Positions 3,506 to 42,079 of a stretch of 64,000 bases of DNA are shown one piece after another (position 1 is the first letter of the stretch; every line of letters begins with the position of its first letter). The stretch is taken from NCBI GenBank assembly GCA_002269645.1, contig NIVC01000578.1, forward strand, positions 448,549 to 512,548, given 5' to 3'. The position numbers and the translations under genes were made by a program. The DNA is from Macrostomum lignano. Lineage: Eukaryota. A model generated the notes under the pieces. The model saw only the letters and a list, made by a program, of their open reading frames with translations, made no database searches and was not told the origin of the DNA.

Positions 3506-6500
3506 TCAATGAGTATACACTTCACCAAAAAATTCTGGCGGGGCACGGGCCCTCTCACTTCGGCGCAATACAGGCTGTTCTGGATGCTCTGGAACATCAG
3601 CAGGGGCGCCGACCGGGGCGCCGATTGGGGTGCCGGCTGGGGCGCCGACCGGGGCGCCGACTGGGGCGCCGGCTGGGTCGCCGGCTGGGGCGCCGGCTGG
3701 GTCGCCGGCTTGGGCGCCGGCTGGGGCGCCGGCTGGGGCGCCGACCGGGGCGCCGACTGGGGCGCCGGCTGGGGCGCCGGCTGGGGCGCCGGCTGGGGCG
3801 CCGGCTGGGGCGCCGGCTGGGGCGCCGGCTGGGGCGCCGGCTGGGACGCCGGCTGGGGCGCCGGATGGGGCGCCGGCTGGGACGCCGTCAAATCTCAGGT
3901 CGTCCTCGTCAGGATTGTGCAGTTGCGCCGCTGGTTGCAATTGAGGTGCTGCAGCTGGACTGGCCGTGTTGCATGGCTTCAGGCGATTGAAATGCACCAC
4001 CCTTCGCCGTCGTGCATTGGCCTCGTGCTGAATGCGGTAGGTGACGTCTGAGATCTGCTTTTTAACGCGCCATGGCCCAGTCCACCATCGATGAAATTTT
4101 CGGCTCTCGCCTCGCTTCAGCGCCGGATTGTGCAGCCAGACCAGATCGTTCTCGCTGAATGCCTTGCCGTGGCACCTCCTGTCGTACGCTGCCTTCTGGT
4201 GCAGTTGCGCTGCCTCCAAGTTTTGTCGCGCCCTCTCGTGCGATGTCTGCAGCCGGCTCCGCAGCTCGGCCACCCATTCACAAGGACGTTGCCTATCCGG
4301 CGCCAGACCTCCGTATGCCAAGTCCAGTGGTAGTCGCAGTTCCCGGCCGAAATGCATCGCCGAAGGTGTCTGACCAGTCGACTTGTGGACTGAAGTGCGG
4401 TAGCCCATCAGTGCAATCTGCAGATGAAGATCCCAGTCTCGCTGATTCTCGTTCACCCATGCTCGCAGCAGCTGCACCAGTGTCCGGTTCATCCGTTCGC
4501 AACCGCCGTCTCCTTCAGGGTGGTAGCCTGTCGTCCGAGTCTTGTCGATTTTCAGCAGCCGCATCGTCTCTTGAAACAGCTGTGACTCCCAGTTCCGACC
4601 CTGGTCGGTGTGCACCGACTGCGGGACTCCAAAGCGAGCCACCCACTCGTTGACAAACGTCCGGGCTGTGGTCTCAGCGTCTTGAGACGGCAGTGGAAAG
4701 GCCTCAGTCCACTTGCTGAAGGTGTCGATGACTACCAGGATGACTGAATTTCCACGATCGGTTCTCGGCAGGCCCACCATGAAGTCCATTTCCAGTCGCT
4801 GGCCAACGCTGCCGACCGCCATGCTCTGTAGAGGTGCCCGCCTGTGCTGGTCAGAATCTTTCAGTGTCGCGCATTCGAGGCACGCAGCACACCAGTCAGT
4901 CACATCTGCTGTCATTCCAGGCCAGTAGAGTCGCGCCCTGATCTTTTCAATGGTCTTCTGCGGTCCGCAGTGGCTGCCGCTCGTTCCAGCATGAGCTTCG
5001 ACAAAAACATCGCGCTGTAGACTCTCTGGCACCAGCAGCTGCTGACAAAAGGCGCTGCCATCTTCGGATTCCCATCGGCGGCACAGCAGTCCGTTCACCA
5101 GTGTCAGCCGCTTAAACTCGGACAGCAGTTGCCGCTGCCGATTGCTCCAGCCATCCGTCTCTGCCTTATCCGGTGGTTGCCCATCTCGCAAGCAGTTCGC
5201 CAGCTTCTGCATGCACCGATCCTCTGCCTGTGCTCGTCGAATAGCGCTGTCGTCATTGAACTCGACAGCGAGCGCAGAGCCACTGCACAGGCAAGGTCCT
5301 TTTCGACACGGTCGCCGACTAAGTGCGTCTGCATTTCCATGTTTCTCGCCCTTGCGATACTCCGTCTGGTAGTCGAATTCGCTTAGCTTATCCAGCCACC
5401 GTGCCAGCTGACCATCGGGATCTCGAAAGCGCAGAAGATGGATCAGCGAGGCGTGATCAGTACGTAGTGTGAATCTTTTTCCTAACAAGTAGCTGCGATA
5501 GTGACCGACGAAGTGCACAATTGCCAGCAGCTCACGCCTCGTTGTGCAGTAATTTCTCTCTGCTTTGGACAGAATGCGACTGCCGTACGCCACCACCTGC
5601 GTCCTGCCACCACGGCGCTCTTGAAGAACTCCGGAGATGGCCACGCCAGAGGCATCAGTATCTAGCACGAACTCAGCGTCTTCTGCGAAAGTCGGCATGA
5701 TGAGGACTGGGCTGGAAGTAAGGCACTGCTTTAGGCGATTAAATGCTGCTGAGCATTCGAGAGTCCAGCTGAAGGTCACGTCCTTTTGCGTTAGCTTGTA
5801 CAGCGGTTCAGCAATCTCACTGTAGTTTTTAACGAAATGACGATAGTAGCCACATAACCCCAGGAATTGTCGCACTTCTGAACGATCTTCGGGCGTTGGC
5901 CACTCCTGCACTGCTTTCACCTTGTCCGGGTCAGTGGTCACGCCATCTTTTGAGATTCGAAAGCCAAGAAATGAGATCTCCTGATAGCACAAGTGGCACT
6001 TGGTCGGCTTCAACTTCAGGTTAGCGGTTCTGAATTTCTGCAACACAAGCTCAAGACGCCGCAGATGCTCCTCGAATCCTTTCGAAAAGATGACAACGTC
6101 GTCAAGAAATGACAGGCACACTTCCCATCGGAGGCCCTTCAGAACGAGTTCCATCAGCCTTGAAAACGTGGCAGGACCATTGCACACACCTTGCGGTAGT
6201 CTCTTGTACTGGAATAATCCTTGTGGCGCAGGAAATGCTGTTTTTGCGCGACTCTCTGAGTCCAGCATCACCTGGGTGTACCCGCTAGTGAAGTCGAGCG
6301 TTGAGAACATTGTGGATCCTGCGAGAGCATCGATCAGATCGCTGGTGTGAGGCAGTGGATGACTGTCTTTGACGGTCACGGAGTTGAGCAGTCTGAAGTC
6401 GTTCACGAAGCGCAAACTGCCGTCCTTCTTCTTCACCAGAATGACCGGGCTCGACCACGGAGAATTCGAAGGCTCTACGATGTCGTCTCTCACCATCTGC

Positions 6501-7533
6501 TCGACCATCTCTGACACAGCTCGCTGGTTCGGCGGCGACAATCTACGAGGAGGCACTCTGATAGGTTTCGCCGACCCGGTGTCAATTTTGTGGTCAAGGA
6601 GTGAAGTGCAGCCCAGGTCGTTTGGACTTTTCGAGAACACATCCTGGTACTGATGCAGAAGATCTTTGACACACTGAACTTGATTGGCTGTAAGATTTTT
6701 CTCATCAATGTGCACATTTGGTACATACTCGGCGATTTGACCTTTCACTGTCTCAACTTGCATTGACAACTCTGCATCGGCACCATCTGACATCGGCTCA
6801 AAAGTCCCCAGTCTTGTTCCGGGGTAAAATGTATGCGGCTTGGTGTCCGTATTGACATAGTGAACAGCGATGAGTCCTCCTCGCAACACCGAGAGGCTGC
6901 GCGCTCCACACATGACCGTGGAGATGTCCTTCGAATTGTCAGGCTCAAAAATGCCGCACTCACCATCAACAGCTGCATCTGACTCACTTGCCAATCTCGC
7001 TGGGAAGACGATTTCGTGACCAGCGGGCACGGTTGTCCTGTCTGCTACCTCAACGGCGAATACACAGCTACTTGCTGCCGATGACTCCATTTTTACTTGC
7101 TGACCGCACACAGTGAGCGTTTGGCGATTGCAGTCGATGACGCAGCCGCAGTTTGCCAGGAAATCTGCACCCAGCAAAAAATCCTTGGCCAGATTGTCGA
7201 CAACTAAAACTCTTTGTCGAACCGTTGCCACACCGAAACTTAGCTGCACTTCCTGCCAACCACAGGCAGCCAAATAGTTACCGTCTGCCAGCTTCAACTG
7301 CACCGGAGTCGTCAAAGGCAGGAGCCTCTCATTCAGCTTGCGAAACAGGGACTTGACATCAAAGACTGGGAACACCCAGTGTCAACTAGACAGCTGGCAG
7401 GGATACACATTGGCAGGATGCGACAGTTTACCAGCATGTTGGCACCAGTGGCTGAGCAGGACACCTCTACGACTGGTTGCGCCGGGATTCTCACTTGCGG
7501 AACGGCACCCCGGCGGTCGCCGCTCCATCGAAG
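3506..7533 (-). CDS. pol: Pol of gypsy 1 (PR-RT-RNaseH-IN) with one 1-bp break just after the protease active site
   Basis: LVDTGCSQSLMS in ORF 7333-7554, continuing in ORF 3506-7375: RT (FLDD), RNase H (LDTDASG), integrase HHCC and D-D-E (MDF, TDQG, ERMN), GPW motif. Confidence 0.9.
3603..3887 (-). repeat. 12-bp coding minisatellite (PAGA)n in the integrase tail
   Basis: About 24 copies of GCCGGCTGGGGC-type units, in frame. Confidence 0.9.
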
Positions 7534-9080: not shown

Positions 9081-9566
9081 TGAAGGGAGGCAGTTGCAGA
9101 GCTGAGGGGAGACAGTTGCAGAGCTGAAGGGAGGCAGTTGCAGAGCTGAAGGGAGGCAGTTGCAGAGCTGAAGGGAGGCAGTTGCAGAGCTGAAGGGAGG
9201 CAGTTGCAGAGCTGAGGGGAGACAGTTGCAGAGCTGAAGGGAGGCAGTTGCAGAGCTGAAGGGAGGCAGTTGCAGAGCTGAAGGGAGGCAGTTGCAGAGC
9301 TGAAGGGAGGCAGTTGCAGAGCTGAAGGGAGGCAGTTGCAGAGCTGAAGGGAGACAGTTGCAGAGCTGAAGGGAGGCAGTTGCAGAGCTGAAGGGAGACA
9401 GTTGCGAGGCTGAAGAGAGGCAGTTGCAGAGCTGAAGAGAGGCAGTTGCAGAGCTGAAGGGAGGCAGTTGCAGAGCTGAAGGGAGGCAGTTGCAGAGCTG
9501 AGGGGAGGCAGTTGCAGAGCTGAGGGGAGGCAGTTGCAGAGCTGAAGGGAGGCAGTTGCAGAGCTG
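9081..9566. repeat. 22-bp minisatellite 3' of paralog A
   Basis: Unit GAAGGGAGGCAGTTGCAGAGCT, ~22 copies; same unit at 22603-22848 and 41726-42072. Confidence 0.95.
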
Positions 9567-10025
9567 CAAGTTGCTACGGTTGAAGCCAGCAAGCAGTCAA
9601 GTCGATGCTCAGCTCGAAGGCCGCCTCGATGCGCTCATCGCGGGGTCTCGCCTGAAGCCCTCCAGCTGGAGCTCAGTGAGCCACGGGCAGCCGCTGGCGA
9701 TGCTGGCGAGGGCGGCGGCAGTCCACTGGCTGCAGTCGGACAGGTGGAGCCGCCGCAGGCCCCTGGCAACCGGACTGGCGCACAGGTCGGCCACCGCCTC
9801 ATCAGTGAGGCTGGATCCAGTGCAACCGAGGGCCCGGAACTCCATCAGATCGAGTGGCCAGGCTGCGAGGCTTCGCAGATTCGCCCAGGCCTGGCGGGTC
9901 AGAAGGCTGCAGTCGTGGATGCGGAGGCAGCGCAGGCGCGGCAGCCGGGAGAGCAGAGCCGCCAGCAGATCGTCGGTGCTCACCTCCAACTCAACATGGG
10001 TCAACTCTGCAGTGAATGGAACTTA

Positions 10026-10260
10026 TAGCAGCAGTCTGAGCATCTGGAAGAACAGCAGTCTGAGCATCTGGGAGAGCAGCAGTCTGAGCATCTGGGAGAG
10101 CAGCAGTCTGAGCATCTGAGAGAGCAGCAGTCTGAGCATCTGGGAGAGCAGCAGTCTGAGCATCTGGGAGAGCAACAGTCTGAGCATCTGGGAGAGCAGC
10201 AGTCTGAGCATCTGGGAGAGCAGCAGTCTGAGCATCTGGGAGAGCAGCAGTCTGAGCATC
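10026..10260. repeat. 24-bp intronic minisatellite (paralog A intron 2)
   Basis: Unit GAGCATCTGGGAGAGCAGCAGTCT, ~10 copies. Confidence 0.95.
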
Positions 10261-13200
10261 AATCCGAGTATCTACCAAAGGAGCGGCAAGGTGAGCGGGA
10301 CTCACCTGGACAGCCACTCAGAGTGTCAGCCAACTGTAAGTCCCATGGCACATCAAAGAACAATCCCGTGAGCTGCAGCCGCTGAAGCCCCGGTGGCAGC
10401 GGACTGCCCGGCTCAGCTCCGATAGAGCACCGGCTTCCGTGAATCTCCAATCGAAGGTCCGCAAGGCCGGCCGGCAGGCAGGCAGCGGAGGATCTGGCGG
10501 AATTGCTCATCTGAGGCTCGAGACACAAACAGTAAATCGAGGCTCTCAAGCGAAGGCAGGGTGGGCAGCAGCCACAATGCTATCTTCTTATTCTTGTAAT
10601 GTGATCCCCAGTAGTGAAGGCTCAGATGCCTCAGGCCGGGCACGGGCGCAGGCGGCTGGTCGGTCCTGAGATCGAAGGTCCCGCCGAAAATTTACACTCG
10701 TATCTCCGTCAGGTTCGGCGCGATGCTCAGCACGCGGGGCAACTCTGGAGGGCGGCGAGTTCAGCGAGGGCATTCAACGAAGGACCGCCGGCAGTCAAGC
10801 AGTTCAATAATTCTAAAGAAATTTATTTAAACCCAACTGTTGCTTGAAAATGCATCAACGGCTTCAACTGTTTCCAATTTATCAGCTCAAAACTTGATAT
10901 TTTTTACCGCCTGAGCTTCCGAAGATGAAGTGAAGCCAGTGTGGCTCGGGTCCCCAATGGTTTCACAAGTCCATCGGCCTGGATTCAGAATAAGCACTGA
11001 TACAGACGAGTGGCAAGCGCAAAGTCCTGCAGTTGCCGCTCTTCCACTCTTTTTAGCCGTCTTTGAAACTGATTTTCCAGATAGTGACTCTAAAGGCGGG
11101 GCGGCCCGTGCTGTGAAATGGGGAATTCAGCAGCGCGTATGCATTTTTAAGCAGTTTGAGCCATTGATGTGCTAAAGAGCGCCCACCCCATTTTTCCAGC
11201 TCCGTACGTCAGCCGGCTTTCTCTCTCCAACCCTGGCCGCTTAGTAGTAAGCATAGTGTACATTTACGACCACCACCCCACGCAATGCAGTAGTCGACTA
11301 AATATTAAATAAATTGCATCGCTTCGCCCACTGTGGCTTTCGTACTTCTTCGTGCAACTGCCAAATCATGCATTGAACTCTTACATGGCGTCGCAAGCCA
11401 TAGCACTTATCGCCACCTGGCGCTTTCGATGAAGAAGGTGAGCCGCATACCATCGCTTAAAAGTGGAAAAATTGGACTCGGCGCTTCGAGAGCTACCTTG
11501 TCGCGGCCGGCATTAAAGATGAAAATCAAGCTCAAGAAATCCTACTCTACTCAGCCGGCGAATTCATCCACTTGCTCGTCGAAGCATTGCACGAGGCGAA
11601 TCAGCCAAGAAACTAGCACAAAACATCCAGAGCCACCTGGACAAGAAAAACAACATCGTCTTCCTACGATACATATTTGAGACCTGCCGACAGCTAGAGG
11701 GCGAAGGAATCGATGCCTGGTATGTCCGACTGAAGAAACTGGCGGAGCCATGCAAGTTCGGCGACTTGAGCAACTCGCTAATCCGGGACAAGGTTGTGGC
11801 GTACTGCCAGTCTGAGAAAATGCGGCGCGATCTGCTGCATTCAGGCGACATCAGCCTGGCGGACACGCTGACCAAGATCCGCGCCAGAGACAGCGGAGCG
11901 ACAGGCGCAAGCAATGGAGCTCGGAAGCCGACCGGTGCCGGAGGACGTGGCAGCAGTGAGCAGCAGCGGCCGCGGCTCGAGAGCGGCAGACGGAAAGTCA
12001 CAAGTCACCTGCAACCGGTGCGGCAGACAAGGGCATGCTGAATGCGACGCCGCCCGGGGCAAGTCCTGCAGGAAATGCGGCAAAATCGGACATTTCGCCC
12101 GTGTGTGCAGGTCCAGTAAAGCCGGCCAACTCAAGGCCATCCCGAGCGAGCAGGAGAACGTGACCTACCTGCTGGACAAAGACTCCGCTCCGTCCAGAAG
12201 GGAATCTTCCACGTGGCCAGTGATCCGGCGTCAGCGAGAGTGACCGCTCAAATCGGCGGCACCTCCATGGACATCCTTATCTACAGCGGGGCCGGCTGCA
12301 ACATCATGGACGTCAGCAGTTTCAATGGCCTGCCACACCGACCCCCACTGCAGCCAGTCAGCAGCCGGCTGTTTGCCTACGGAAGCTCGCACCCACTAAA
12401 GCTGGTCGGCAAGATGACTCTGCCTGTAAATGTTTTTTGTGTATCCAGAGAAGCGCCTTTTTTATACCCGCCCAGCAGTCAGCCGGCAGCCGAGGTTCTC
12501 GCCGTCCACCGATCAGAGGGCCTCATCGACCAACTGCTGAAAGGAAATCGATCAGCGGACGAAGGCCTCCCAGAGCAACTGCAGCTGAGCCACATCCTCA
12601 CCAAGCACGCTCAAGTGTTCAGCGGCATCGGATGCGTCAAGAACTACACGGCAACGATCCACCTGACCGGTCTGCCACGCGCCCTCAAGGGTTCCTGTCC
12701 ACCTGGCCGCAGCGGTCGACAAGGAGCTCAAGCTGCTCGAGGACCTGGACATCATCGAGCCTGTCAACGGCCCGGCACCCTGGGTGGCTCGGATGGTCGT
12801 AGTGCCAAAGGCGCAGACCGGCGAAGTTCGAATCACCCAGGACCTCCGAGCTGTCAACAGGTTCGTCATCAGGGAGCGACATCAAATCCCAACTTTCGAG
12901 GAGGTGACTGGGTGCATGGCAGGCGCCAAAGTCTTCTCGGAGCTGGGTGTTGCCAAGGCTTTCTACCAGATCCTTGTGGCGGAAAGCTGCAGGAACCTGC
13001 TAACCTTCTCGACACCACGGGGGCTGCGACGGCTCAAGCGGTTGTGCATGGGCCTCTCCACGGCTCAGGAAATCCTCCAAGTCGTCATGTCAGGCATCCT
13101 GGCTGGACTCGACAAGGTCAAGTGGATCCATGACGACATGCCTCGCCCGCCTCCAGCAACACGGCGTCACGCTCAATCCCGGAAAGTGCAAGCTGGCCAG

Positions 13201-14908
13201 AGACAAGATCACATTCATGGGCATGCAGCTCTCAGCCAGTGCAGTGCAGCCCACCGAAGACAAGATCGAGACAGTCAAAGCATTCAAAGCTCCAGAGACC
13301 GCCAGCCAGGTGAGGTCATTTCTAGGCCTTGTCAACTACCTGGCTGTGTTCACACCGCAGCTGTCAAAAATCGCTGAGCCACTGCGGCGCCTGACGAAGA
13401 AAGGCGCGGTCTGGAGATGGAGCGAAGCTGAAGACGCCGCTTTCAAGCAGCTGAAACAGCAGATCACGGAAGCCGGCGCCCTTAGCTTCTTCGACCAGAG
13501 GCTGCGAACCGAGCTCATAGTCGACGCCGGTCCGAGGGGACTCGGAGCCATCTTGGCGCAGCGGCGAGAAGATGGCACTTCAAGACCAGTGGCTTATGCC
13601 AGCCGGTCGCACTCCGATGTAGAGTCCAGATACTGCCAGACTGAAAAGGAGGCGCTGGCAGTGAAATTCGGATGTCTCCGATTCCAATACTACCTCGATT
13701 CGATGTGATCACGGACCACAGGCCGTTGGTCAACATGCTGGCGCGAGGGTCGAGGCCGCCTCCTAGAGTCGAGCGAATGGCTCTTCAGCACATGAACTTC
13801 AAGGTGGTGTACTGCCCAGGGCCCCAGAACGCGGCAGACATCCTCAGCGGACAACCGCTAGCGACGTCCGGGCACAACAAAGATGCACAGCAGGACTCCG
13901 CCAGCATCGGTGCGGTACTGCAGGCCGCGGTGCCGAGAGCGCTCACGGTAGAGGACATCAGGCGGCACTCGCAGGCTGACTCGCTGATCAGAGCCGCAAT
14001 CGCCGCCATCCAGGGAGCCAGGTGGGACCTCAGCCACCCAGAGCTGAGGTCACTGCATCCACTACGAGACGAGCTTGCTGAGGAGGACGGAGTGCTGCTT
14101 CGACGGGACAGGATTGTGGTGCCAAGCAGCCTCCGGGAGACGATGTTGCGCCTCGCACATGCCGGACACCTGGGACTGCGGAAGACACTGGCCAGGCTGA
14201 GCAGCAAAGTCTGGTGGCCAAAGATGAGCGCAGATGCGGACAAGGCCGTCAGCAGTTGCCGCAGCTGCATCATGGCGTCACATAAGCCGACAGTCAGCGC
14301 GACGCCACTGCACCCGTCGAGCATCCCAAAGGGCGCCTGGCTGTCGATTGGCGCCGACTTCCTCGGTCCGGTGCAGAACAAGATGCTGCTCGTTTGCGTG
14401 GATCACTACTCCCGGTATCCCGAGGTGCAGGTCATGCAGTCTACTACAGCGGAGGCAGTCATCCCGAAGCTGCGGGAATCATTTGCAGGTTCGGCATCCC
14501 GGAGGAGCTCGTTACGGACAACGGGCCTCCATTCTCGTCGGAGCAGTTCAAGGACTTCCTCAGGAGCTTCGGAATTCGACACCGGGCCATCACTCCGCTC
14601 TACCCTGCGACCAACGGCATGACCGAGCGCCTGAACAGATCGATCAACAAGGTCGTCCGCGCTGCAATCGCGGAGAGCCGGGACTGGCGCGAGGCTATGG
14701 ACGAGTGGATTCTGGCGTACGGGACGGCGCCACATGCCACAACCGGACGCGCATCCGCGCAGCTGCTGATGGGCCGCGCTATGGGCAACGGCGTCCCTGG
14801 CCGGCGGCCACTAGCGCGGTGCGCATCAACGACAAGGAGCTGCGGGAGCACGACCGCAAGCAGAAGCTGACGATGAAGCGGCACGCCGACGCTGCTCGGA
14901 GACCAAGA

Positions 14909-16223
14909 GCTTGCTCATGCTGCACCTACCTTCTAGTGGTAGCAAGTGAAGACCGCACGCCTCGGCTGTGCGGAAACAAAAAGGGAGCAGCAAATGCAAT
15001 GGAGGCCAAAAAAGATGTAAAAATCTGCAGCGGCTGATGCACTCTAATATCAAAAACTCATTGGCAAAGAGCGGTGACGTGGAGCGGAACCCGGGGCCGA
15101 AGACTTGGCCCAAAGAGAGACGGCAACGACGACAACAAAGAAGAAAGGCAGGCGAGGAAAGAAAGAATAAGAAGAAGAAGAAGATACAGGCCAGGGTCGT
15201 CGAAGCCGGCGTGGAATCTACCGCCCTCTTCGACTCAGCGATGCGCCCATGGCACAAGAGAGAGATCAAAACACTACAAGCAAACATTGACAAAATATAT
15301 CGGCACATCTGGAGCAGCAAAACGAAACAGCCGTTTCGCGAGATGGAAGAACGGGGAGTGAACATGTTCGAAGTGCGTAGGCAACTACAAGTAAGGAGCA
15401 TAGAAAGCAAAATAGAAGTCAGAACGCTAGAAAGGATCGGCCACCTACTCCGGATGGAGAACTCCCGGATCACGAAGCAGGTAACCCTAGGATGGCCAAA
15501 GAGAAAACTACCAAGGACGACAGCAAGAAAGCGCAAACAAATAACCATCGACTACTGGCGAAAAGTAATAAGAAAAGCTGGATACGAACCGGACGATATC
15601 GAGCAGATCGCAAGGGACCGAAGATCTTGGAAAGCGGCAGTGAAGGCAAGATTGGATTACGTAACTAAATGGGAAGAGATGAAAGCGACGAACAAGAACA
15701 CGACCATGCCAAGGGACCAGACAGGACGTCAAACAGAGGACAGATACTGCACCATCTGCAACAGAGAGTTCAAGACTCACACGGGATTGAAGATACACAA
15801 CACCAGAATGCATCGTGAACAAAGAAAAGAGGAGAAGAAGTGCCAAAGATGCGGAGACATCCTAAACAACAAAGCCAGCGAAACGAACCACCTGAAGACC
15901 TGCAAAGGCGCCCCGAAAGGGACATGCCCGTACTGTCTCCAGTCCAGAAGCGCCAGCAACATGGCGAGACACATACGCACCTGTGCGCAGTACAACGACT
16001 TACAAATAGGATACCAACAAGAGGAAGAGGACCAAGACGCCGAAACGACGGACAAGCCTGTACCAACCGAAGCATCGAGTAGAGCGAAGACTGCTTGCCC
16101 AGGCTGCAACAAGAGTATCTCGAATACAAATTTAGCAAGACACCGGAGAGTGTGCACCGAGGAAACCAATGAGTGCCATGCCTCTTAGGAGGTCGATTGG
16201 CCATACAAGACAAGACAAGACAA
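14909..16223 (+). mobile_element. Internally deleted non-LTR (RTE-like) retroelement nested in the gypsy 2 integrase
   Basis: TSD GAGACCAAGA at 14899-14908 and 16224-16233, (CAAGA)n 3' tail. The integrase reads ...HADAARR before it and HNYAVGDQVLW after it. Confidence 0.85.
15037..16188 (+). CDS. 383-aa ORF: 2A-like peptide, basic linker, post-RT LINE domain, zinc fingers
   Basis: GDVERNPGP at 15073-15099; LERIGHLLRM...KQVTLGW...DRRSW (C-terminal LINE ORF2 region); one C2H2 and three C2HC-like motifs; no APE or YxDD core. Confidence 0.7.
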   Translation: MHSNIKNSLAKSGDVERNPGPKTWPKERRQRRQQRRKAGEERKNKKKKKIQARVVEAGVESTALFDSAMRPWHKREIKTLQANIDKIYRHIWSSKTKQPFREMEERGVNMFEVRRQLQVRSIESKIEVRTLERIGHLLRMENSRITKQVTLGWPKRKLPRTTARKRKQITIDYWRKVIRKAGYEPDDIEQIARDRRSWKAAVKARLDYVTKWEEMKATNKNTTMPRDQTGRQTEDRYCTICNREFKTHTGLKIHNTRMHREQRKEEKKCQRCGDILNNKASETNHLKTCKGAPKGTCPYCLQSRSASNMARHIRTCAQYNDLQIGYQQEEEDQDAETTDKPVPTEASSRAKTACPGCNKSISNTNLARHRRVCTEETNECHAS

Positions 16224-17871
16224 GAGACCAAGAAAGCACAACTACGCGGTCGGCGACCAGGTGCTGTGGAAACGCGTCAACCCGCTGAAGGGCCAAACCC
16301 CATTCGAGAGCGAGCCCTGGACTGTGACCAAAGTGCAAGGCAACTCGCTGAAGCTACGGCGCGGTCAGGCCACCTGCCGGCGGCACTGCACGGCCCTGAA
16401 GGCGCTGCCACCGGAGCCCGACCTGGTGGAGCCGCAGGCGGCGGCACCAGACGCTACCGGCCCCGCCGACGTCGAGCAGGACGTGCCGATCGCCCGCACC
16501 CCGCATCCGAGAGCGGCGAAGGAGGGAATCAAAGCCTACATGTGATTGAGGGGGGTGATTTGATAGTCTTGAAACCCGTTGACCAGTTAACCAGTTTTAA
16601 AAGATGGTTGAAACTGTTACATGCCTTTTGTAACCTTTGCGATTTTTTCGTTTCTCGAAATGCTTTTATTTCGGATGCGTCCGTTGTTATTTTTCAATGG
16701 CAGCGGCAACCAATATTTTATTTTCCCTGCGATCGGTATGTCGTTCGAGTCTCCCCGCGCTTCGAATGCAAGCATCAAGTTTTCAAAAACTTATTTTCTT
16801 TTCTGCGTTGAGGAGAGATGTGAGCCATTGATTTGCTATAGAGCGCCCACCCCATTTTTCCAGCCCGTACGTCAGCCGGCTTTCTCTCTCTAACCCTCGC
16901 CCCCTTATCTGTACTCGTAGTAAGCAAAGTGTACATTTACGACCACCACCCCACGCAATGCAGTAGTCGACTAAATATAAATAAATTGCATCGCTTCGCC
17001 CACTGTGGCTTTCGTACTTCTTCGTGCTACTGCCAAATCATGCATTGAACTCTTACAAGCAGCACCGGGGCTTCAAGCAGATTCCCATGCACGGGTGCCA
17101 GGTGAATATTTAAATAAGCCAAGTGAAAAGGGGAAGGCACTGACGGTTGACTGACAGCTGCACCGACAACACGGAGAGCCGGGGACACTGCCAGATCAGC
17201 AAGGAGCTTAGAAGCATCCATGTCCGGCAGGTGCAGCGCCGAAAGGCGGCCGACGAGCTCAACGAACAGCTGGCGTACCTGATGATCGCCCAGCCAGCCA
17301 TACATAGGGCTGTCAATTTCCAGCAGCGAGAGGCGCGGGCAGCCGGACAGCAGGCAGCTCAGCGATTTGTCTGACAGCCTGCTTCTGCTGAAGCCGAAAA
17401 GACGAAGCTGCCGCAGGTTTGGGCAGCAGCGGCCCGCCACGGTCACGGCAGAGTCTCCGTCAGTGTTCCGCAGGCTGAGGCAGGTGAGGCTCGCTGATGC
17501 GGCCAGCAGCACTGGCTGCCGCAGAAGTGGATCGGCTGTCGACCGCCCTTGCTTAGGTGTCTCATAGCAGGCCGAAATCTCCCGCACGCTGCCGCCCAGC
17601 GAGTCTCTGAGCCGCTCCATCAGCTCAGCTTCCATGGCGTCGACATCAATGCGGATTTTGACTTTCCGCCACAGCCGCGGCTGCATGGCAAGCCGCCGCC
17701 AGCGCCTGCTCAGCTGAGCGCACCGGCCGAGGCTGGTCTGGTCCAGCTCGGACAGGATCTGCGTGAGCAGCTCCTCTGGCAGCTGCTCGATCAGACAGGG
17801 ACTGCCGGACTGCGAGAGTTCGGATTGGAAACAGAAGGGAAACTTCCGGATAATTCAGGACTGCCACAGTC

Positions 17872-18464: not shown

Positions 18465-19520
18465 TGCCGTTCATCAGGCTCTCTATAATTCAAGAAGGCC
18501 TGAGTCTCCATGCCGTTCATCAGGCTCTCTATAATTCAAGAAGGCCTGAGTCTCCATGCCGTTCATCAGGCTCTCTATAATTCATCAAGGCCTGGGTCTC
18601 CATGCCGTTTATCAGGCTCTCTATAATTCATCAAAGCCTGAGTCTCCATGCCGTTCATCAGGCTCTCTATAATTCATCAAAGCCTGAGTCTCCATGCCGT
18701 TCATCAGGCTCTCTATAATTCATCAAGGCCTGAGTCTCCATGCCGTTCATCAGGCTGTCTATAATTCATCAAAGCCTGAGTCTCCATGCCGTTCATCAGG
18801 CTGTCTATAATTCATCAAGGCCTGAGTCTCCATGCCGTTCATCAGGCTCTCTATAATTCATCAAAGCCTGAGTCTCCATGCCGTTCATCAGGCTCTCTAT
18901 AATTCATCAAAGCCTGAGTCTCCATGCCGTTCATCAGGCTCTCTATAATTCATCAAGGCCTGAGTCTCCATGCCGTTCATCAGGCTGTCTATAATTCATC
19001 AAAGCCTGAGTCTCCATGCCGTTCATCAGGCTGTCTATAATTCATCAAGGCCTGAGTCTCCATGCCGTTCATCAGGCTGTCTATAATTCATCAAAGCCTG
19101 AGTCTCCATGCCGTTCATCAGGCTGTCTATAATTCATCAAAGCCTGAGTCTCCATGCCGTTCATCAGGCTCTCTATAATTCATGAAGGCCTGAGTCTCCA
19201 TGCCGTTCATCAGGCTCTCTATAATTCATCAAAGCCTGGTCTCCATGCCGTTCATCAGGCTGTCTATAATTCATCAAGCCTGAGTCTCCATGCCGTTCAT
19301 CAGGCTGTCTATAATTCATCAAAGCCTGAGTCTCCATGCCGTTCATCAGGCTCTCTATAATTCATCAAAGCCTGAGTCTCCATGCCGTTCATCAGGCTCT
19401 CTATAATTCATCAAGGCCTGAGTCTCCATGCCGTTCATCAGGCTGTCTATAATTCATCAAAGCCTGAGTCTCCATGCCGTTCATCAGGCTGTCTATAATT
19501 CATCAAAGCCTGAGTCTCCA
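18465..19520. repeat. 46-bp minisatellite 3' of paralog B
   Basis: Unit GCCTGAGTCTCCATGCCGTTCATCAGGCTCTCTATAATTCATCAA(A/G), ~23 copies. Confidence 0.95.
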
Positions 19521-19642
19521 TGCACTGCCTACAAAAACAGAAGCAGAAAGACGCAGCCACAAGAAGGCAGATTTGCCAGAAGCAGCAGTGCATTCAGTTC
19601 ATCTCAGCCAACTTTATAAAAATATGTAAATGGACACACAAG

Positions 19643-21845: not shown

Positions 21846-22602
21846 CTGTAAGAAAGAAAACAGAATATTTGAAGAAACAGACAGAAGCGACTGCCTCCTG
21901 TTGTCAAGAAGCAACAAAATTGAACAATGGTTCAAAACTGCAGCAACACAGCCCAGCATACGGTGCAGGCACCAACACTGGCTAATCCAGAAAATGCATT
22001 TATTTTTAACCTGGCTGTCCGCTGGCTTTACAGGCTAACAGGATAACAGGATACATGGTACTTGAAGTAATCATCAGATGTTAGGGAATGAGTCAGTAAT
22101 ACGTGTAGGAGTGTTACTTGAAAACTGCTCAAAGGCGCAACAGCAGATTTTTGAGGGACTAGTCTCTTGTCTAGGAATTTAGTTTCTCTGGGCGGTCTAG
22201 CGCAGGCTCTGGTATGCCAGCGACCCAGGCTCGATTCCAAGTGCAGTCACATTAATTTGGGGCTGAATTGCAATCTCGGCTTGGCTCTGCTCGTGCAATT
22301 AACGGCCTTGAGAGCCAACCCCCCGAGACGCAGTAAAGTGTACATGTGTAACGATAAAATAAAGTTAGGGCCGCTGTACACTCCTGTGTGAGTGTGTGCC
22401 TGCGTACGTATCCGCGCGCTTGTATGCCTGCTCAGGGGAGTCGGCGGAATGGGCAGTAATGCCTCTCGCCGATTGTGTGCCTACCTGTATGTCGCTTAAA
22501 GTGCGCCTGACCCTGCCTCTAATAAAAAAAACCCACTGAGTTGAACATTTTCCTTCTTCTCTGAATGAGAGATGCAAAGCCGAAGTGAGTCAGTTGAAGA
22601 GC

Positions 22603-22848
22603 TGAAGGGAGTCAGATGCAGAGATGAAGGGAGGCAGTTGCAGAGCTGAAGGGAGGCAGTTGCAGAGCTGAAGGGAGGCAGTTGCAGAGCTGAAGGGAGA
22701 CGGCTGCACAGCTGAAGGGAGACAGTTGCAGAGCCGAAGGGAGACAGTTGCAGAGCTGAAGGGAGGCAGTTGCAGAGCTGAAGGGAGGCAGTTGCAGAGC
22801 TGAAGGGAGGCAGTTGCAGAGCTGAGGGGAGGCAGTTGCAGAGATGAA
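22603..22848. repeat. 22-bp minisatellite 3' of paralog C
   Basis: Same unit as 9081-9566, ~11 copies. Confidence 0.9.
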
Positions 22849-22853
22849 AGTTG

Positions 22854-25851
22854 CTACGGTTGCAGCCAGCAAGCAGTCAAGTCGATGCTCAGCTCAAAGG
22901 CCGCCTCGATGCCCTCATCGCGGGGGACTCGCCTGAAGCCCTCCAGCTGGAGCTCAGTGAGCCACGGACAGCCGCTGGCGATGCTGGCGAGGGCGACGGC
23001 AGTCAGCTGGCTGCAGTCGGACAGGTGGAGCCACCGCAGGCCTCTGGCGACCGGACTGACGCACAGGTCGGCCACCGCCTCATCAGTGAGGCTGAAGCCA
23101 GTGCAATCGAGGGCCCGGAACTCCATCAGATCGAGTGGCCAGGCTGCGAGGCTTCGCAGATTCGCCCAGGCCTGGCGGGTCAGGAGGCTGCAGTTGTTGA
23201 TGCAGAGGCAGCGCAGGCGCGGCAGCCGGGAGAGCAGAGCCGCCAGCAGGTCGTCGGTGCCCGCCTCCAGCTCAACATAGGTCAACTCTGCAGTTGAATG
23301 GAATTTATAGCAGCTGAGCAAGTCTGAGCATCTGGGAGAACAGCAGTCTGAGCATCTGGGAGAGCAGCAGTCTGAGCATCTGGGAGAGCAGCAGTCTGAG
23401 CATCTGGGAGAGCAGCAGTCTGAGCATCTGGGAGAGCAGCAGTCTGAGCATCTGGTAGAGCAGCAGTCTGAGCATCTGGGAGAGCAGCAGTCTGAGCATC
23501 TGGGAGAGCAGCAGTCTGAGCATCTGGGAGAGCAGCAGTCTGAGCATCTGGGAGAGCAGCAGTCTGAGCATCTGGGAGAGCAGCAGTCTGAGCATCTGGG
23601 AGAGCAGCAGTCTGAGCATCTGGGAGAGCAGCAGTCTGAGCATCTGGGAGAGCAGCAGTCTGAGCATCTGGGAGAGCAGCAGTCTGAGCATCTGGGAGAG
23701 CAGCAGTCTGAGCATCTGGGAGAGCAGCAGTCTGAGCATCTGGGAGAGCAGCAGTCTGAGCATCTGGGAGAGCAGCAGTCTGAGCATCTGGTAGAGCAGC
23801 AGTCTGAGCATCTGGGAGAGCAGCAGTCTGAGCATCTGGGAGAGCAGCAGTCTGAGCATCTGGGAGAGCAGCAGTCTGAGCATCTGGGAGAGCAGCAGTC
23901 TGAGCATCTGGGAGAGCAGCAGTCTGAGCATCTGGGAGAGCAGCAGTCTGAGCATCTGGGAGAGCAGCAGTCTGACCATCTGGGAGAGCAGCAGTCTGAG
24001 CATCTGGGAGAGCAGCAGTCTGAGCATCTGGGAGAGCAGCAGTCTGAGCATCTGGGAGAGCAGCAGTCTGACCATCTGGGAGAGCAGCAGTCTGAGCATC
24101 TGGGAGAGCAGCAGTCTGAGCATCTGGGAGAGCAGCAGTCTGAGCATCTGGGAGAGCAGCAGTCTGACCATCTGGGAGAGCAGCAGTCTGAGCATCTGGG
24201 AGAGCAGCAGTCTGAGCATCTGGGAGAGCAGCAGTCTGAGCATCAATCCGAGTATGTAGGGTGAGCGGCAGGGTGAGCGGCAGGGTGAGCGGCAGGGTGA
24301 GCGGGACTCACCTGGACAGCCACTCAGAGTGTCAGACAACTGTAAACTCCATGGATCATCAAATAATGATCCTGTGAGCTGCAGCTGCTGAAGCCCCGGC
24401 GGCAGCGGACCGCCCAGCTCAGCTCCGAACGAGCACCGACTTCCGTGAATCTCCACTCGAAGGTCCGCAAGGCCGGCAGTCAGGCAGCGGAGGATCTGGC
24501 GGAATTGCTCATCTGAGACTTCGGAAAACACTAAATCGAGGCTCTCAAGCGAGGGCAGGCTGGGCAGCAGCCACAATGCTATCTTAGTATTCTCGCCATA
24601 TGACCAGTTCCAGTCAAGGCTCAGGTGTTTCAGCCTGGGAACGGGCGCAGGCGGCTGGTCGGTCCTGAGATCGAAGTTCCCGCCGCAAATTTCCACTCGC
24701 AGCTCTGTCAGGTTCGGCGCGATGCTCAGCACGCGGGGCAACTCTGGAGGGCGGCGAGTTCAGCGAGGGCATTCAATGAAGAACCGCCGACCGTCAAGCA
24801 ATTCAATAATTCTATGGAAATTTGTTTAAAGCATGTCTGAACTTAAGAAGATAAAGTACAGCCAGTATGGGTTGAGTTGAGTCCTGGGTGGTTTCAAAAA
24901 TTTATCGACTAGGATTCAGAATAAGCACTAATGCAGAAGAGTGGCAAGCGCAAAGAAGTTAAGTTGTCTTAAGAACAGATTTTTCTAGACTGCAAAGCCT
25001 TTAGCTGGGGAGCTGAGATGGGGAATTCAGCAGCGCTGATGCATTTTTAAGAAGCTCATGGCTTCAAGCAGGTGCCTGCATTGGATTGGAACGGCGGTCC
25101 CTGCATACAAAAAGCCCAGTGAAAACATACCGCAGTGACCGCCGCGGCTGGCAGACAGCCCCATCGACAACACGGAGAGCCGGGGACACTCTGCCAGATT
25201 ATCAAGGAGCTCCAAAGCCTCGATGAACGGCAGGTACAGTGCCGAGAGGCGGCCGACGAGCTCAACGAACGGCTGGCGCACCTGAAAGTGCCGCCATTCA
25301 TCGAACGCTTCATCGCTGTCAGTTTCCAGCAGCGAGAGGCGCGGGCAGTCGGACAGCAGGCAGCTCAGTGAGGCGGCCGACAGCGCGCTGTTGCAGCCGC
25401 AAAGGCGAAGCTCCCGCAGGTTGCGGCAGAAGCAGGCAGCCACGGTCACTGCAGTGTCTCCTTTAGCGTGCCACAGGCTGAGACAGGTGAGGCTGGCGGA
25501 TGCGACCAGAAGCAGCGGCAGCCGAGGGAGGAAGGAGGCCGAGATCTCCTGCACGCTGTTGCCCAGCCAGTCTCTGAGCCGCTCCATCAGCTCGGCATCT
25601 GCGGTGCGGCCGTCAATGTGGATTTTGCGCCACAGCTGCGGCTGTGTGGCGAGCTGCCACCACCGCCTGCTCAGCTGAGCGCACCGGCCGAGGCTGGTCT
25701 GGTCCAGCTCGGACAGGATCTGCGTGAGCAGCTCTTCTGGCAGCTGCTCCAGGTGAAACGGAGAGCTGCCGGGTTCGAATTCTCCAGCCGCCTCCATTTG
25801 CAGGCGTTTCCGGACCGGAGCCTCCAGATCGAAGGTCACAGAATGAGCCAT
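22854..25851 (-). CDS. F-box/LRR paralog C, apparently intact (~528 aa; exons 25131-25851, 24312-24743, 22854-23287)
   Basis: ATG at 25851, basic VRKRL motif, F-box, LRRs. Exon lengths 721/432/434 are in phase (alternative exon-1 donor at 25140 is also in phase); TAG at 22854. Confidence 0.8.
23322..24243. repeat. 24-bp intronic minisatellite (paralog C intron 2)
   Basis: About 38 near-perfect copies. Confidence 0.95.
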
Positions 25852-26252
25852 CTGTAAAGCTGGGAAGTGGCAAAGGCAGTCAGTCATTGAAGCATTTATC
25901 TCTACAAAGTGCTCTGCATTTTATAATGCAAAATTACCAATTCATTTGCAAGGGTGGGATATGCTAGAATTATATCCACAGCGCACAGCGATATATTTAA
26001 TACCTGCAAAAACTGCAATTCAGTGATTTCATTCAGAGCTCCGAACACTGGAGGTAGAGAGACAAAAAACAAATGACTGAAAATGAAAACTATACTGTAT
26101 ATAACTGTTATTTCCCCTGGTGCTCGCTTCACTGCGCATCAACATGCACAACTCCCAGGCTTGCGGGCCTTCATGGTGGAGACGACTGCTCTGACTACCT
26201 GCCGCCTGGTTGCTTTGGAGTCACGCAACGAAATGGTTGGCTTGTAATCTGT

Positions 26253-41725: not shown

Positions 41726-42072
41726 AAGTTGCAGAGCTGAAGGGAGGCACTTGCAGAGCTGAAGGGAGGCAGTTGCAGAGCTGAAGGGAGGCAGTTGCAG
41801 AGCTGAAGGAAGGCAGTTGCAGAGCTGAAGGGAGGTAGTTGCAGAGCTGAAGGGAGGCAGTTGCAGAGCTGAAGGGAGGCAGTTGCAGATCTGAAAGGAG
41901 GCAGTTGCAGAGCTGAAGGGAGGCAGTTGCAGAGCTGAAGGGAGGCAGTTGCAGAGCTGAAGTTGCAGAGCAGTTGCAGAGCTGAAGGGAGGCAGTTGCA
42001 GAGCTGAAGGGAGGCAGTTGCAGAGCTGAAGGGAGGCAGTTGCAGAGCTGAAGGGAGTCAGTTGCAGAGCTG
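41726..42072. repeat. 22-bp minisatellite 3' of paralog F
   Basis: Same unit as after A and C. Confidence 0.9.
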
Positions 42073-42079
42073 GGAGTTG

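What the first reader, a model, noticed from the sequence alone, without database searches (positions are those of the whole stretch)
14909..16223. Compact non-LTR derivative with a 2A/StopGo-like peptide and an intact RT-less ORF
Seen: a 1315-bp unit with a 10-bp TSD and (CAAGA)n tail. Its ORF runs MHSNIKNSLAKSGDVERNPG/P, a Lys/Arg-rich stretch, then jumps in frame (at an AAG run) to the post-RT domain and zinc fingers; APE and RT are absent. The ORF is undamaged while the host gypsy is riddled with frameshifts. Known: D(V/I)ExNPG/P mediates ribosomal skipping and 2A-like motifs occur near the ORF2 start of several non-LTR clades. Inferred: a non-autonomous bipartite LINE derivative mobilised in trans that may still make a ~363-aa nucleic-acid-binding protein, either a helper or a dominant-negative regulator of its parent. 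Caveat: the residues upstream of GDVE are less hydrophobic than in strong 2As.
Basis: partly seen in the sequence, partly recalled or inferred. Interest (0 to 1): 0.8.

Follow-up and report, generated by a model that had tools for sequence, protein, structure and literature searches.

The report
Internally deleted flatworm LINE copy with 2A leader
This is a 1.3-kb copy of a jumping gene (a LINE) in the flatworm Macrostomum lignano that has lost its endonuclease and most of its reverse transcriptase but kept both ends and an open reading frame; each feature is of a known type, and I could not test whether it is a one-off or a spreading family.

Summary
The unit 14909-16223 has a perfect 10-bp target-site duplication and an (ACAAG)x4 tail. 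Removing it restores the integrase reading frame of an old Gypsy element. Its 383-codon ORF starts MHSNIKNSLAKSGDVERNPGP, continues through 28 Lys/Arg-rich residues, and joins in frame, at an AAG run, the RT thumb, C-terminal domain and four zinc fingers of a LINE protein. Full-length relatives from other organisms (35-40% identity) have the order 2A-like motif, basic linker, APE, RT, thumb/CTD, four zinc fingers, a short 3' UTR and a simple-repeat tail. About 830-850 residues, roughly 2.5 kb covering APE and RT fingers/palm, are missing here. The window comes from Macrostomum lignano. N-terminal 2A motifs in single-ORF LINEs and internally deleted ("bipartite") non-autonomous LINEs are both already described. 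The intact ORF needs no selection to explain it: the element is the youngest layer of a three-level nest. The key test could not be run, because the source genome is in none of the searchable collections: do other copies share this junction with different TSDs? Verdict: real, well-formed, a new member of known kinds, modest interest.

The parts
14899..14908 (.). Left copy of the target-site duplication, GAGACCAAGA
   Evidence: It is identical to 16224-16233. The empty-site reconstruction restores the Gypsy integrase ORF.
14909..15036 (+). 5' leader (UTR) of the element, 128 nt, with four upstream AUGs. The last uORF (14999-15037) ends in UGAUG, overlapping the main start codon.
   Evidence: There is no Rfam match and its folding is not exceptional.
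15037..16188 (+). Intact 383-codon fusion ORF: 2A-like leader, basic stretch, RT thumb/CTD and four zinc fingers
15037..15099 (+). 2A/StopGo-like leader M1-P21, MHSNIKNSLAKSGDVERNPG|P. The core GDVERNPGP is canonical.
   Evidence: Homologous N-termini in relatives are HDIETNPGP (P0012, P0018), TIHPNPGP (P0036), TIESNPGP (L007) and DIHPNPGP (L001). The same core occurs in viral 2As (PMC8623073).
15100..15183 (+). Lys/Arg-rich stretch K22-K49. It is the remnant of the basic linker that lies between the 2A motif and APE in full-length relatives.
15163..15184 (+). (AAG)n run containing the in-frame deletion junction. The 5' part ends ...KNKKK; the 3' part starts (S)KK-IQARVVEA.
   Evidence: period 3, 7.3 copies; homology to relatives starts at query aa 42-50.
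15184..15690 (+). RT thumb plus conserved helical C-terminal domain (I50 to about aa 218; motifs QARVVEA, YRHIWS, LERIGHLLRM)
   Evidence: invariant columns; helices 25-218, pLDDT mostly 75-93.
15748..16155 (+). Four zinc fingers: C2H2 at aa 238-259; C2HC at aa 269-289, 297-316 and 354-373
   Evidence: (PF00096). The Foldseek search gave only weak matches to zinc-finger arrays.
16189..16204 (+). 16-nt 3' UTR containing GGTCGATTGGCC (16191-16202), a possible 4-bp mini-hairpin. The same motif (GGCCGAnTGGCC) sits right after the stop codon in relatives L004-L006.
   Evidence: read directly from the sequences. Folding of the larger 3' region is not exceptional.
16205..16223 (+). Simple-repeat tail (ACAAG/CAAGA)n. 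It merges with the first 2 nt of the TSD.
   Evidence: Relatives end in (CCAGA)n, (AAG)n, (ATTTGG)2 or (AAAAGG)2.
16224..16233 (.). Right copy of the target-site duplication, GAGACCAAGA
11157..17057 (+). Host: an old Gypsy LTR retrotransposon (LTRs 11157-11385 and 16821-17057, 92% identical). Its integrase region is interrupted by the LINE derivative.

Best explanation
The unit is a young, non-autonomous, internally deleted copy of a single-ORF APE-type LINE of Macrostomum lignano.

**The parent type.** It encodes one polyprotein in this order: a short leader ending in a 2A-like NPGP motif, a Lys/Arg-rich linker, the APE endonuclease, the reverse transcriptase, the thumb/C-terminal domain, and four zinc fingers. 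A roughly 16-40-nt 3' UTR and a short simple-repeat tail follow.

**What happened here.** About 2.5 kb is missing, from the end of the basic linker through APE and the RT fingers/palm. The two breakpoints lie in Lys-codon AAG runs, so the join is a microhomology junction that happens to be in frame.

**Shown.** The copy was integrated by target-primed reverse transcription into the integrase region of an already old Gypsy element: it has a 10-bp TSD and a tail, and the empty site can be restored. It cannot move on its own.

**Inferred.** I lean to the deletion having been present in the RNA template, or having arisen by template switching during reverse transcription, rather than arising after integration. 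The 2A-like start, the basic stretch and the zinc fingers are inherited parts of the parent, not new acquisitions. The ORF is intact because the insertion is recent, not because it is under selection. If transcribed, the RNA keeps the 3' UTR motif and tail that the parent's RT presumably recognises, so it could be copied in trans.
For: - **Anatomy and TPRT hallmarks:**
- **Both ends match one kind of full-length element.** P0012 (1293 aa; APE 101-335 and RT 645-899 by Pfam) aligns with residues 50-100 to window 15076-15228 (E 3e-4) and with residues 927-1283 to 15115-16164 (E 4e-73).
- **Same architecture in other relatives:** an intact 1318-codon ORF in L007, plus P0018, P0036 and L001.
- **Position of the junction:** homology of 543 representative proteins starts at about aa 42-50 of the ORF, which is the AAG-run junction.
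- **Tails and 3' UTRs of relatives** are of the same type.
- **Youth:** the TSD is 10/10 identical and the tail 100% perfect. The element lies inside a Gypsy whose LTRs are 92% identical and whose pol has at least 4 frameshifts, and that Gypsy is itself inserted in a repeat unit.
- **Composition:** the sense strand is A 37% / T 13%, as is usual for LINEs.
- **Literature:** N-terminal 2A in single-ORF LINEs (PMC3708506); internally deleted non-autonomous LINEs (PMC5786205).
Against: - No parent from the same genome was seen. The closest relative is only 48% identical (P0001) and the closest full-length one 40% (P0012), so the exact breakpoints and the AAG microhomology in the parent are inferred, not observed.
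- Only one copy is available, so the timing of the deletion (before, during or after integration) is undecided.
- The contrast with the Gypsy is statistically modest. At the Gypsy's coding frameshift density (about 1.7 per kb), an equally old 1.15-kb ORF would still be intact about 15% of the time.
Confidence: 0.8

Rival explanations
1. This is one member of an established non-autonomous family: a 'bipartite' LINE derivative that is transcribed from its retained 5' end and repeatedly mobilised in trans by the parent's protein. Many loci would then share this exact junction and have different TSDs.
For: - It retains a complete 5' end with leader and start codon, and the 3' UTR motif plus tail.
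- It has a clean TSD around a 'full-length' short unit, whereas LINE copies are usually 5'-truncated (general knowledge).
- Internally deleted families are known for RTE, Ingi, Vingi and R2 (PMC5786205).
- A second, independent in-frame deletion derivative with its own 13-bp TSD exists in another metazoan assembly (P0022/L009).
Against: - There is only one copy in 64 kb and no parent in the window.
- The ORF and its N-terminus are absent from a collection of about 15 billion proteins.
- The P0022 derivative is a singleton cluster, and it was found through a protein database, which only sees ORF-bearing copies.
- One-off internal deletions during reverse transcription would give the same picture.
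Confidence: 0.35
2. The roughly 363-aa product released after the 2A skip (basic stretch, thumb/CTD and four zinc fingers) is made and has a function: either a helper that binds the element's RNA, or a dominant-negative competitor of the parent's protein.
For: - The ORF is intact and all 30 family-invariant residues of the thumb/CTD are retained.
- The predicted structure is a folded helical domain plus zinc fingers.
- The 2A core is canonical.
- From my own knowledge: the C-terminal C2H2 region of L1Tc has nucleic-acid chaperone activity.
Against: - Youth alone explains the intactness.
- An in-frame junction has a 1-in-3 prior.
- Four upstream AUGs precede the start codon.
- The upstream 2A context is weak: L at -12 only (PMC13405545).
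- There are no expression data and no second copy with which to measure constraint.
Confidence: 0.07
3. A full-length element inserted here, and the 2.5-kb interior was lost afterwards by a microhomology-mediated genomic deletion between two AAG runs. The junction would then be unique to this locus.
For: The junction lies in a simple AAG repeat, which is a plausible substrate for slippage or microhomology-mediated repair. There is only one copy.
Against: This needs two rare events: a full-length insertion, then a large deletion confined to the element that also happens to be in frame. The rest of the element shows no decay (perfect TSD and tail, open ORF), so there was little time for a second event.
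Confidence: 0.2
4. An assembly artefact: reads from a full-length copy were mis-joined or collapsed at the AAG low-complexity run.
For: The M. lignano genome is exceptionally rich in repeats and simple repeats and hard to assemble (PMC5730564). The junction is low-complexity.
Against: A clean in-frame 2.5-kb skip, with both flanks in one nested, internally consistent structure, is not a typical long-read error. Independent deletion derivatives exist elsewhere.
Confidence: 0.03

Closest known systems
RIME (from ingi) and NARTc (from L1Tc) in trypanosomes: bipartite non-autonomous LINEs
   Same: They keep only the 5' and 3' parts of a single-ORF APE-type LINE (PMC5786205). That LINE starts with a 2A-like sequence (PMC3708506) and, from my own knowledge, ends in C2H2 zinc fingers. 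They depend on the parent for movement.
   Different: From my own knowledge, RIME and NARTc are short (about 0.26-0.5 kb), non-coding and poly(A)-tailed. This unit is 1.3 kb, keeps a 383-codon in-frame fusion ORF, has a pentanucleotide-repeat tail and lacks any RNase H remnant. Relationship to the Ingi clade was not tested.
Non-autonomous derivatives of Vingi-1_EE (hedgehog), Bov-A (from Bov-B/RTE) and R2 SIDE-type elements made by internal deletion
   Same: They were generated by internal deletion of an autonomous LINE and keep both termini (Kojima 2011 as cited in PMC5786205 and PMC4494074; PMC3414825, listed).
   Different: Those are documented multi-copy families and are non-coding. Here the copy number is unknown and an ORF survives.
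Single-ORF APE-type LINEs with an N-terminal 2A-like sequence (Rex1, L2, CR1, Crack and Ingi clades; Odon et al. 2013)
   Same: A D(V/I)ExNPGP motif lies close to the N-terminus of the only ORF, upstream of APE, with variable conservation of the key Glu among relatives (PMC3708506).
   Different: That paper lists vertebrates, cephalochordates, molluscs, echinoderms, cnidarians and trypanosomes, not flatworms. Here, and in relatives P0036 and L001, the motif is only 15-20 aa from the first Met rather than the 40-80 aa reported. This copy has lost APE and RT.
Protein-coding non-autonomous LINEs: HAL1 (L1), HeT-A (Jockey), Ag-Sponge
   Same: They are non-autonomous LINE derivatives that still encode a protein (PMC5786205).
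   Different: They encode ORF1p/Gag-like proteins. This one encodes an N-terminus-to-C-terminus fusion of the ORF2-type polyprotein (thumb/CTD/zinc fingers), so it fits neither of the two categories in that paper ('ORF1-absent' or 'ORF1-present').
P0022 / L009:2703-4579, an unannotated element in ENA assembly ERZ25074608 (a metazoan)
   Same: It belongs to the same LINE lineage. Its leader, ending ...ETDIESNPGP, is fused in frame to a downstream part of the polyprotein, and it is flanked by a TSD (13 bp, GTTATATGTAATA).
   Different: The junction is different (NPGP|GFNIYHQ, in mid-RT, so FADD and the thumb are retained). The 5' region is tandemly duplicated, there is a frameshift before the last zinc fingers, and it is a singleton cluster.

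Membership tests
APE-type non-LTR retrotransposon (LINE) insertion | Target-site duplication flanking the insert, and an empty site that can be reconstructed | tested here: met
   The 10-bp TSD is identical on both sides. Removing the insert restores the Gypsy integrase ORF. The chance rate is 0.2%.
APE-type non-LTR retrotransposon (LINE) insertion | 3' end with a poly(A) or simple-repeat tail directly before the TSD | tested here: met
   (ACAAG)x4.2, 100% perfect. Relatives carry (CCAGA)n, (AAG)n or hexamer repeats at the same place.
APE-type non-LTR retrotransposon (LINE) insertion | Encodes an APE endonuclease and a reverse transcriptase (autonomy) | tested here: not met
   There is no APE or RVT_1 in the ORF, and none in the window by tblastn with six full-length relatives. 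Only the RT thumb, CTD and zinc fingers remain. It is therefore a non-autonomous derivative, not an autonomous LINE.
Bipartite / internally deleted non-autonomous LINE family (RIME, NARTc, Vingi-derived and Bov-A type) | Retains the 5' and 3' parts of an autonomous LINE with the interior missing | tested here: met
   P0012 residues 50-100 and 927-1283 both align, and about 830-850 residues between them are absent. This was tested against distant relatives (35-40% identity), not against the true parent.
Bipartite / internally deleted non-autonomous LINE family (RIME, NARTc, Vingi-derived and Bov-A type) | Several genomic copies share the same deletion junction but have different flanks and TSDs | not testable with these tools
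   There is a single copy in the window. The M. lignano genome is in none of the searchable collections.
Bipartite / internally deleted non-autonomous LINE family (RIME, NARTc, Vingi-derived and Bov-A type) | An autonomous partner with matching 5' and 3' ends exists in the same genome | not testable with these tools
   None is present in the window. The nearest full-length relatives come from other organisms.
2A / StopGo ribosome-skipping peptide | C-terminal core D(V/I)ExNPG|P | tested here: met
   GDVERNPGP at aa 13-21, the only instance in six frames and 0 in 300 shuffles. The same core is listed for viral 2As.
2A / StopGo ribosome-skipping peptide | Suitable upstream context: helical and hydrophobic, Leu-enriched at -13 to -10 | tested here: inconclusive
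   Upstream is MHSNIKNSLAKS. Between -19 and -10 the hydrophobic residues are L-12, A-11 and I-16. Relatives P0012 and P0018 have much stronger contexts (FVGLKLL, IAQLKLM). Criteria are from PMC13405545 and PMC3708506. In the AlphaFold model residues 1-21 have pLDDT below 50.
2A / StopGo ribosome-skipping peptide | Demonstrated skipping activity in a reporter | not testable with these tools
   An experiment is needed.
Protein-coding non-autonomous LINE of the HAL1 / HeT-A / Ag-Sponge type | Encodes an ORF1p/Gag-like protein and lacks ORF2 | tested here: not met
   The ORF is homologous to the C-terminal part of the APE-RT polyprotein, not to an ORF1.
A specific LINE clade (CR1/L2/Rex1/Crack group versus Ingi/Vingi) | Placement of the RT domain in a reference RT phylogeny (RTclass1) | not tested
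   This copy has no RT, and no reference RT set was available. Relatives have APE plus RT without RNase H, C-terminal zinc fingers and simple-repeat tails. These features are compatible with several clades, so the clade is left open.

The most novel reading that the evidence does not exclude
The unit is a member of a propagating, protein-coding class of bipartite LINE derivatives not covered by the current split into 'ORF1-absent' and 'ORF1-present' types. It would be an in-frame fusion of the 2A leader and basic linker to the RT thumb/CTD/zinc-finger module. Its product would bind the family's RNA 3' end and modulate the parent's retrotransposition, either as a parasite's helper or as a dominant-negative brake. 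The independent derivative P0022 in another animal would then hint that this lineage produces such forms repeatedly.
Probability: 0.08. Interest if true: 0.65.

Novelty: new member of a known kind. Interest (0 to 1): 0.3.

Why it matters
As it stands, this is a clean, well-delimited example of how LINEs shed their enzymatic core yet keep the ends needed to be copied. It also extends 2A-leader LINEs to a flatworm, Macrostomum lignano, a regeneration model with transgenesis.

It would matter more if the M. lignano genome holds many copies with this junction. That would define a non-autonomous LINE family that still encodes part of ORF2, and would give a tractable system for three questions:
- what the LINE C-terminal domain and zinc fingers bind;
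- whether such truncated proteins help or inhibit the parent;
- whether a 2A placed only 20 residues from the start codon skips at all.

Tried and rejected
**Searches for further copies or the parent**
- blastn and tblastn within the window found nothing.
- An exact-protein look-up found nothing.
- Protein-guided scans of metagenome, prokaryote-genome and viral contigs found no close relative. An alignment-guided metagenome scan gave only three distant loci.
- A search with the N-terminal 72 aa found nothing.

**RNA features**
- An Rfam scan of 14700-16400, looking for 5' HDV-like ribozymes or known LINE 3' elements, gave only two sub-threshold chance hits.
- Folding of the 5' leader (z = -1.8) and the 3' 146 nt (z = +1.2) is not exceptional.

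**Structure**
- The AlphaFold model (pLDDT 70) searched with Foldseek against the PDB gave only weak zinc-finger-array matches, none with E <= 0.001. The helical thumb/CTD part could not be tied to a solved RT.

**Clade assignment**
- No reference RT set was held. The supplements of PMC3708506 are not held and Kojima 2011 is not held. The clade is left open.

**Readings rejected**
- An ORF1-type coding element (HAL1/HeT-A-like): rejected because the ORF is ORF2-derived.
- A host or domesticated gene: rejected because of the TSD, the tail, and nesting inside a dead Gypsy.
- Selection as the reason for the intact ORF: not needed, given the nesting order.
- P0002 and P0004 start at M-SKK-QARVVEA, exactly at the junction position, and so looked like similar RT-less forms. 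In its contig P0004 is just the C-terminal piece of a stop-interrupted full-length element; in the short P0002 contig the frame continues upstream with thumb-preceding residues seen in full-length relatives, not a 2A/basic leader.
Full report

Yes. Window 14909-16223 is bounded by two identical copies of GAGACCAAGA (14899-14908 and 16224-16233). It ends in (ACAAG)x4.2 with 100% matches at 16205-16225. A 10-bp flanking repeat occurs by chance around only 0.2% of random 1315-bp segments of this repeat-rich window. Cutting out 14909-16233 joins the flanks into one open Gypsy integrase C-terminus...KRHADAARRPRKHNYAVGDQVLWKRVNPLKGQ.... This is therefore a true insertion with a reconstructable empty site.

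The ORF runs from ATG 15037 to TAG 16188 (383 aa; 406 aa from an upstream GTG). It begins MHSNIKNSLAKSGDVERNPGP. That is the only D[VI]ExNPGP in all six frames of the window, against none in 300 composition-preserving shuffles. Next come 28 Lys/Arg-rich residues ending in an (AAG)x7 run, then IQARVVEAGVES... Pfam finds only C2H2-type zinc fingers in the ORF, with no APE and no RT.

**2. What is the C-terminal part?**

- A search of 5.8 billion proteins returned 11 relatives, the best 48% identical. All are C-terminal pieces of non-LTR RT proteins (FADDTT motif, PF00078).
- An exhaustive HMMER search of 1.84 billion representatives found 543 relatives (42 at E<=1e-30). Nearly all matches begin at residues 42-50 of the query, which is the AAG run.
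- In alignments the window's ...KKKKK-IQARVVEA lines up with SKK(W/T/M)QARVVEA of the relatives, about 95 residues after their FADD motif.
- The retained block is therefore the RT thumb, a conserved helical C-terminal domain (YRHIWS, LERIGHLLRM) and four zinc fingers at aa 238-259, 269-289, 297-316 and 354-373. 'Post-RT' is slightly inexact.
- AlphaFold gives a helical domain over residues 25-218 plus the fingers (mean pLDDT 70). Foldseek against the PDB found only weak zinc-finger arrays.

**3. What is the N-terminal part?**

Full-length relatives show the whole plan. L007 is a 4.2-kb metagenome contig with an intact 1318-codon ORF that reads ...RLQTIESNPGP, a 40-aa K/R-rich stretch, IATWNVQ (start of APE), RT, thumb/CTD and four zinc fingers. 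The following relatives repeat this order:

| Relative | Length | N-terminal motif |
|---|---|---|
| P0012 | 1293 aa | ...FVGLKLLHDIETNPGP |
| P0018 | 1323 aa | ...IAQLKLMHDIETNPGP |
| P0036 | 1161 aa | MSLVKIQLRTIHPNPGP |
| L001 element | frameshifted | MVIRWCLRDIHPNPGP |

Pfam places APE at 101-335 and RT at 645-899 of P0012, with no RNase H. By tblastn, P0012 residues 50-100 hit window 15076-15228 (E 3e-4) and residues 927-1283 hit 15115-16164 (E 4e-73). Nothing in the window matches the 830-850 residues between them. The unit is thus an internal-deletion derivative lacking about 2.5 kb. Relatives have Lys codons on both sides of the break (basic linker; S-K-K before QARVVEA), so a microhomology junction within AAG repeats is the natural reading. 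The true parent was not seen, so this remains an inference.

**4. The 3' end**

Relatives have very short 3' UTRs followed by simple repeats: (CCAGA)n in L010 and L008, (AAG)n in L001 and L007, (ATTTGG)2 in L005 and (AAAAGG)2 in L006. The (CAAGA)n tail is therefore genuine for this lineage.

The window's 16-nt 3' UTR contains GGTCGATTGGCC. L004, L005 and L006 have GGCCGA(C/A)TGGCC at the same place, directly after the stop codon. This is a possible 4-bp hairpin, with a C-to-U change that keeps pairing as G-U. I take it as a candidate RT recognition site that the derivative has kept. This rests on reading four sequences; no covariation test was possible.

**5. Context and age**

- ORF 153-1745(-) is 99% identical to NCBI 'hypothetical protein BOX15_Mlig008300g1 [Macrostomum lignano]'. 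The window is therefore from that flatworm, whose genome is known for an unusually high load of simple repeats and TEs (PMC5730564). This fits the 143 tandem-repeat rows in the window.
- The host Gypsy spans 11157-17057. Its 229/237-bp LTRs are 92% identical (7 mismatches and 4 indels over 239 columns). Its pol is broken into at least 3 frames by at least 4 frameshifts.
- That Gypsy is itself inserted into a repeat unit that occurs three times in the window.
- The LINE derivative is therefore the innermost, youngest layer, which is enough to explain an open ORF, a perfect TSD and a perfect tail.
- At the Gypsy's coding frameshift density (about 1.7 per kb), an equally old 1.15-kb ORF would be intact about 15% of the time.

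**6. The 2A-like motif**

The core GDVERNPGP is canonical, and the same core is listed for viral 2As (PMC8623073). N-terminal 2A-like sequences in single-ORF APE-type LINEs are established for the Rex1, L2, CR1, Crack and Ingi clades. Their activity depends on the upstream context and on the Glu (PMC3708506). Recent screens find them widespread in non-LTR elements, but only a minority are highly active (bioRxiv 10.64898/2026.09.24.754024).

Counting G as -1, this copy has L-12, A-11 and I-16 as its hydrophobic residues between -19 and -10. Active eukaryotic 2As are enriched for Leu at -13 to -10 and for a helix over -19 to -10 (PMC13405545). The first in-frame Met is only 20 residues upstream of the skip site, as in P0036 and L001. 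The 128-nt leader holds four upstream AUGs, and the last uORF ends in UGAUG on the main start codon. Skipping activity is therefore possible but unproven, and I would not predict it to be strong. In any case the motif is inherited from the parent.

**7. Family or one-off?**

This is the crux, and I could not test it. There is no second copy and no parent in the window. Neither the exact ORF nor its N-terminus is in the protein collections. Scans of the metagenome, prokaryote-genome and viral contig collections found no close relative.

One related observation came from ENA assembly ERZ25074608, which is a metazoan (a Fritz gene lies nearby). There, P0022/L009 is another element of this lineage in which the leader ...ETDIESNPGP is fused in frame directly to mid-RT (GFNIYHQ...). 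It is flanked by a 13-bp TSD. This shows that the lineage throws off internal-deletion derivatives. However, P0022 is a singleton cluster, and finding it through a protein database biases towards ORF-bearing copies.

**8. Comparison with known systems**

Internally deleted 'bipartite' non-autonomous LINEs are known from Ingi (RIME), L1Tc (NARTc), Vingi, RTE (Bov-A) and R2. Protein-coding non-autonomous LINEs (HAL1, HeT-A, Ag-Sponge) encode ORF1p (PMC5786205). This unit works like the former group. It differs in keeping an ORF2-derived fusion ORF, which fits neither category of that paper. With one copy, that is a curiosity rather than a new class. The clade of the lineage could not be assigned.

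**9. Verdict**

- The identity as an APE/RT-less internal-deletion derivative of a 2A-leader LINE is secure (about 0.95).
- A trans-mobilised family is plausible but untested (about 0.35).
- A functional protein is unlikely on present evidence (about 0.07).

It is a new member of known kinds, and interest is modest.

Noticed in passing
window 153-1745 (-): A 530-aa GC-rich, Pro-rich ORF is 99% identical to NCBI 'hypothetical protein BOX15_Mlig008300g1 [Macrostomum lignano]'. This identifies the source organism of the window.
   Followed up: yes
window 11157-17057, with 9081-11154 + 17057-17808 versus 41727-44344 and 22570-25884: Three-level nesting. A repeat unit that carries minisatellites and occurs three times in the window was hit by a Gypsy element (LTRs 11157-11385 and 16821-17057, 92% identical; TSD about AAGCAG). 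That Gypsy was in turn hit by the LINE derivative.
   Followed up: partly
window 3506-7375 (-): An uninterrupted 1289-aa Gypsy pol ORF (protease, RT, RNase H, integrase and a C-terminal SH3/p58 domain). It belongs to a different family from the host Gypsy (24-35% aa identity) and may be a young or active element.
   Followed up: partly
window 14909-15039: The element's 128-nt leader has four upstream AUGs. The 12-codon uORF at 14999-15037 terminates in UGAUG, overlapping the main start codon. This arrangement resembles stop-start coupling reported for some LINEs, but it may be chance.
   Followed up: no
window 16191-16202; L004, L005 and L006, directly after their stop codons: A shared 12-nt 3' UTR motif, GG(T/C)CGA(T/C/A)TGGCC, lies just before the simple-repeat tail in elements whose proteins are only about 36% identical. 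It is a possible mini-hairpin recognised by the RT.
   Followed up: partly
L009:2690-4592 (ENA ERZ25074608, contig ctg181254): An independent in-frame internal-deletion derivative of the same LINE lineage (P0022, 580 aa). It has a tandemly duplicated 5' region (two copies of about 210 bp), the junction ...DIESNPGP|GFNIYHQ in mid-RT, a frameshift before the last zinc fingers, and the 13-bp TSD GTTATATGTAATA.
   Followed up: partly
window 14899-14908 / 16205-16233: The TSD (GAGACCAAGA) ends in CAAGA, the same pentamer as the tail repeat unit, and the tail/TSD boundary shares 2 nt (GA). This could reflect a target preference or priming microhomology, or it could be coincidence.
   Followed up: no
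window 48416-50442 (-): Two adjacent ORFs of 398 and 277 aa have no Pfam match. They look like the remains of an unclassified mobile-element protein.
   Followed up: no
window, many sites, e.g. 35286-36621, 23321-24244, 18465-19523, 37900-38667: Minisatellite density is exceptional: a 20-mer x67, a 24-mer x38, a 46-mer x23, a 20-mer x39 and others, giving 143 TRF rows in 64 kb. This is consistent with the published difficulty of assembling this genome.
   Followed up: no
L010:3987-4030 and L010:4085-4516: The closest full-length relative (P0012, ENA ERZ893895) ends in (CCAGA)n, and a called gene with an RT_RNaseH (PF17917) hit lies about 100 bp downstream of it. It may therefore also be next to or nested in LTR-retrotransposon sequence.
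   Followed up: no
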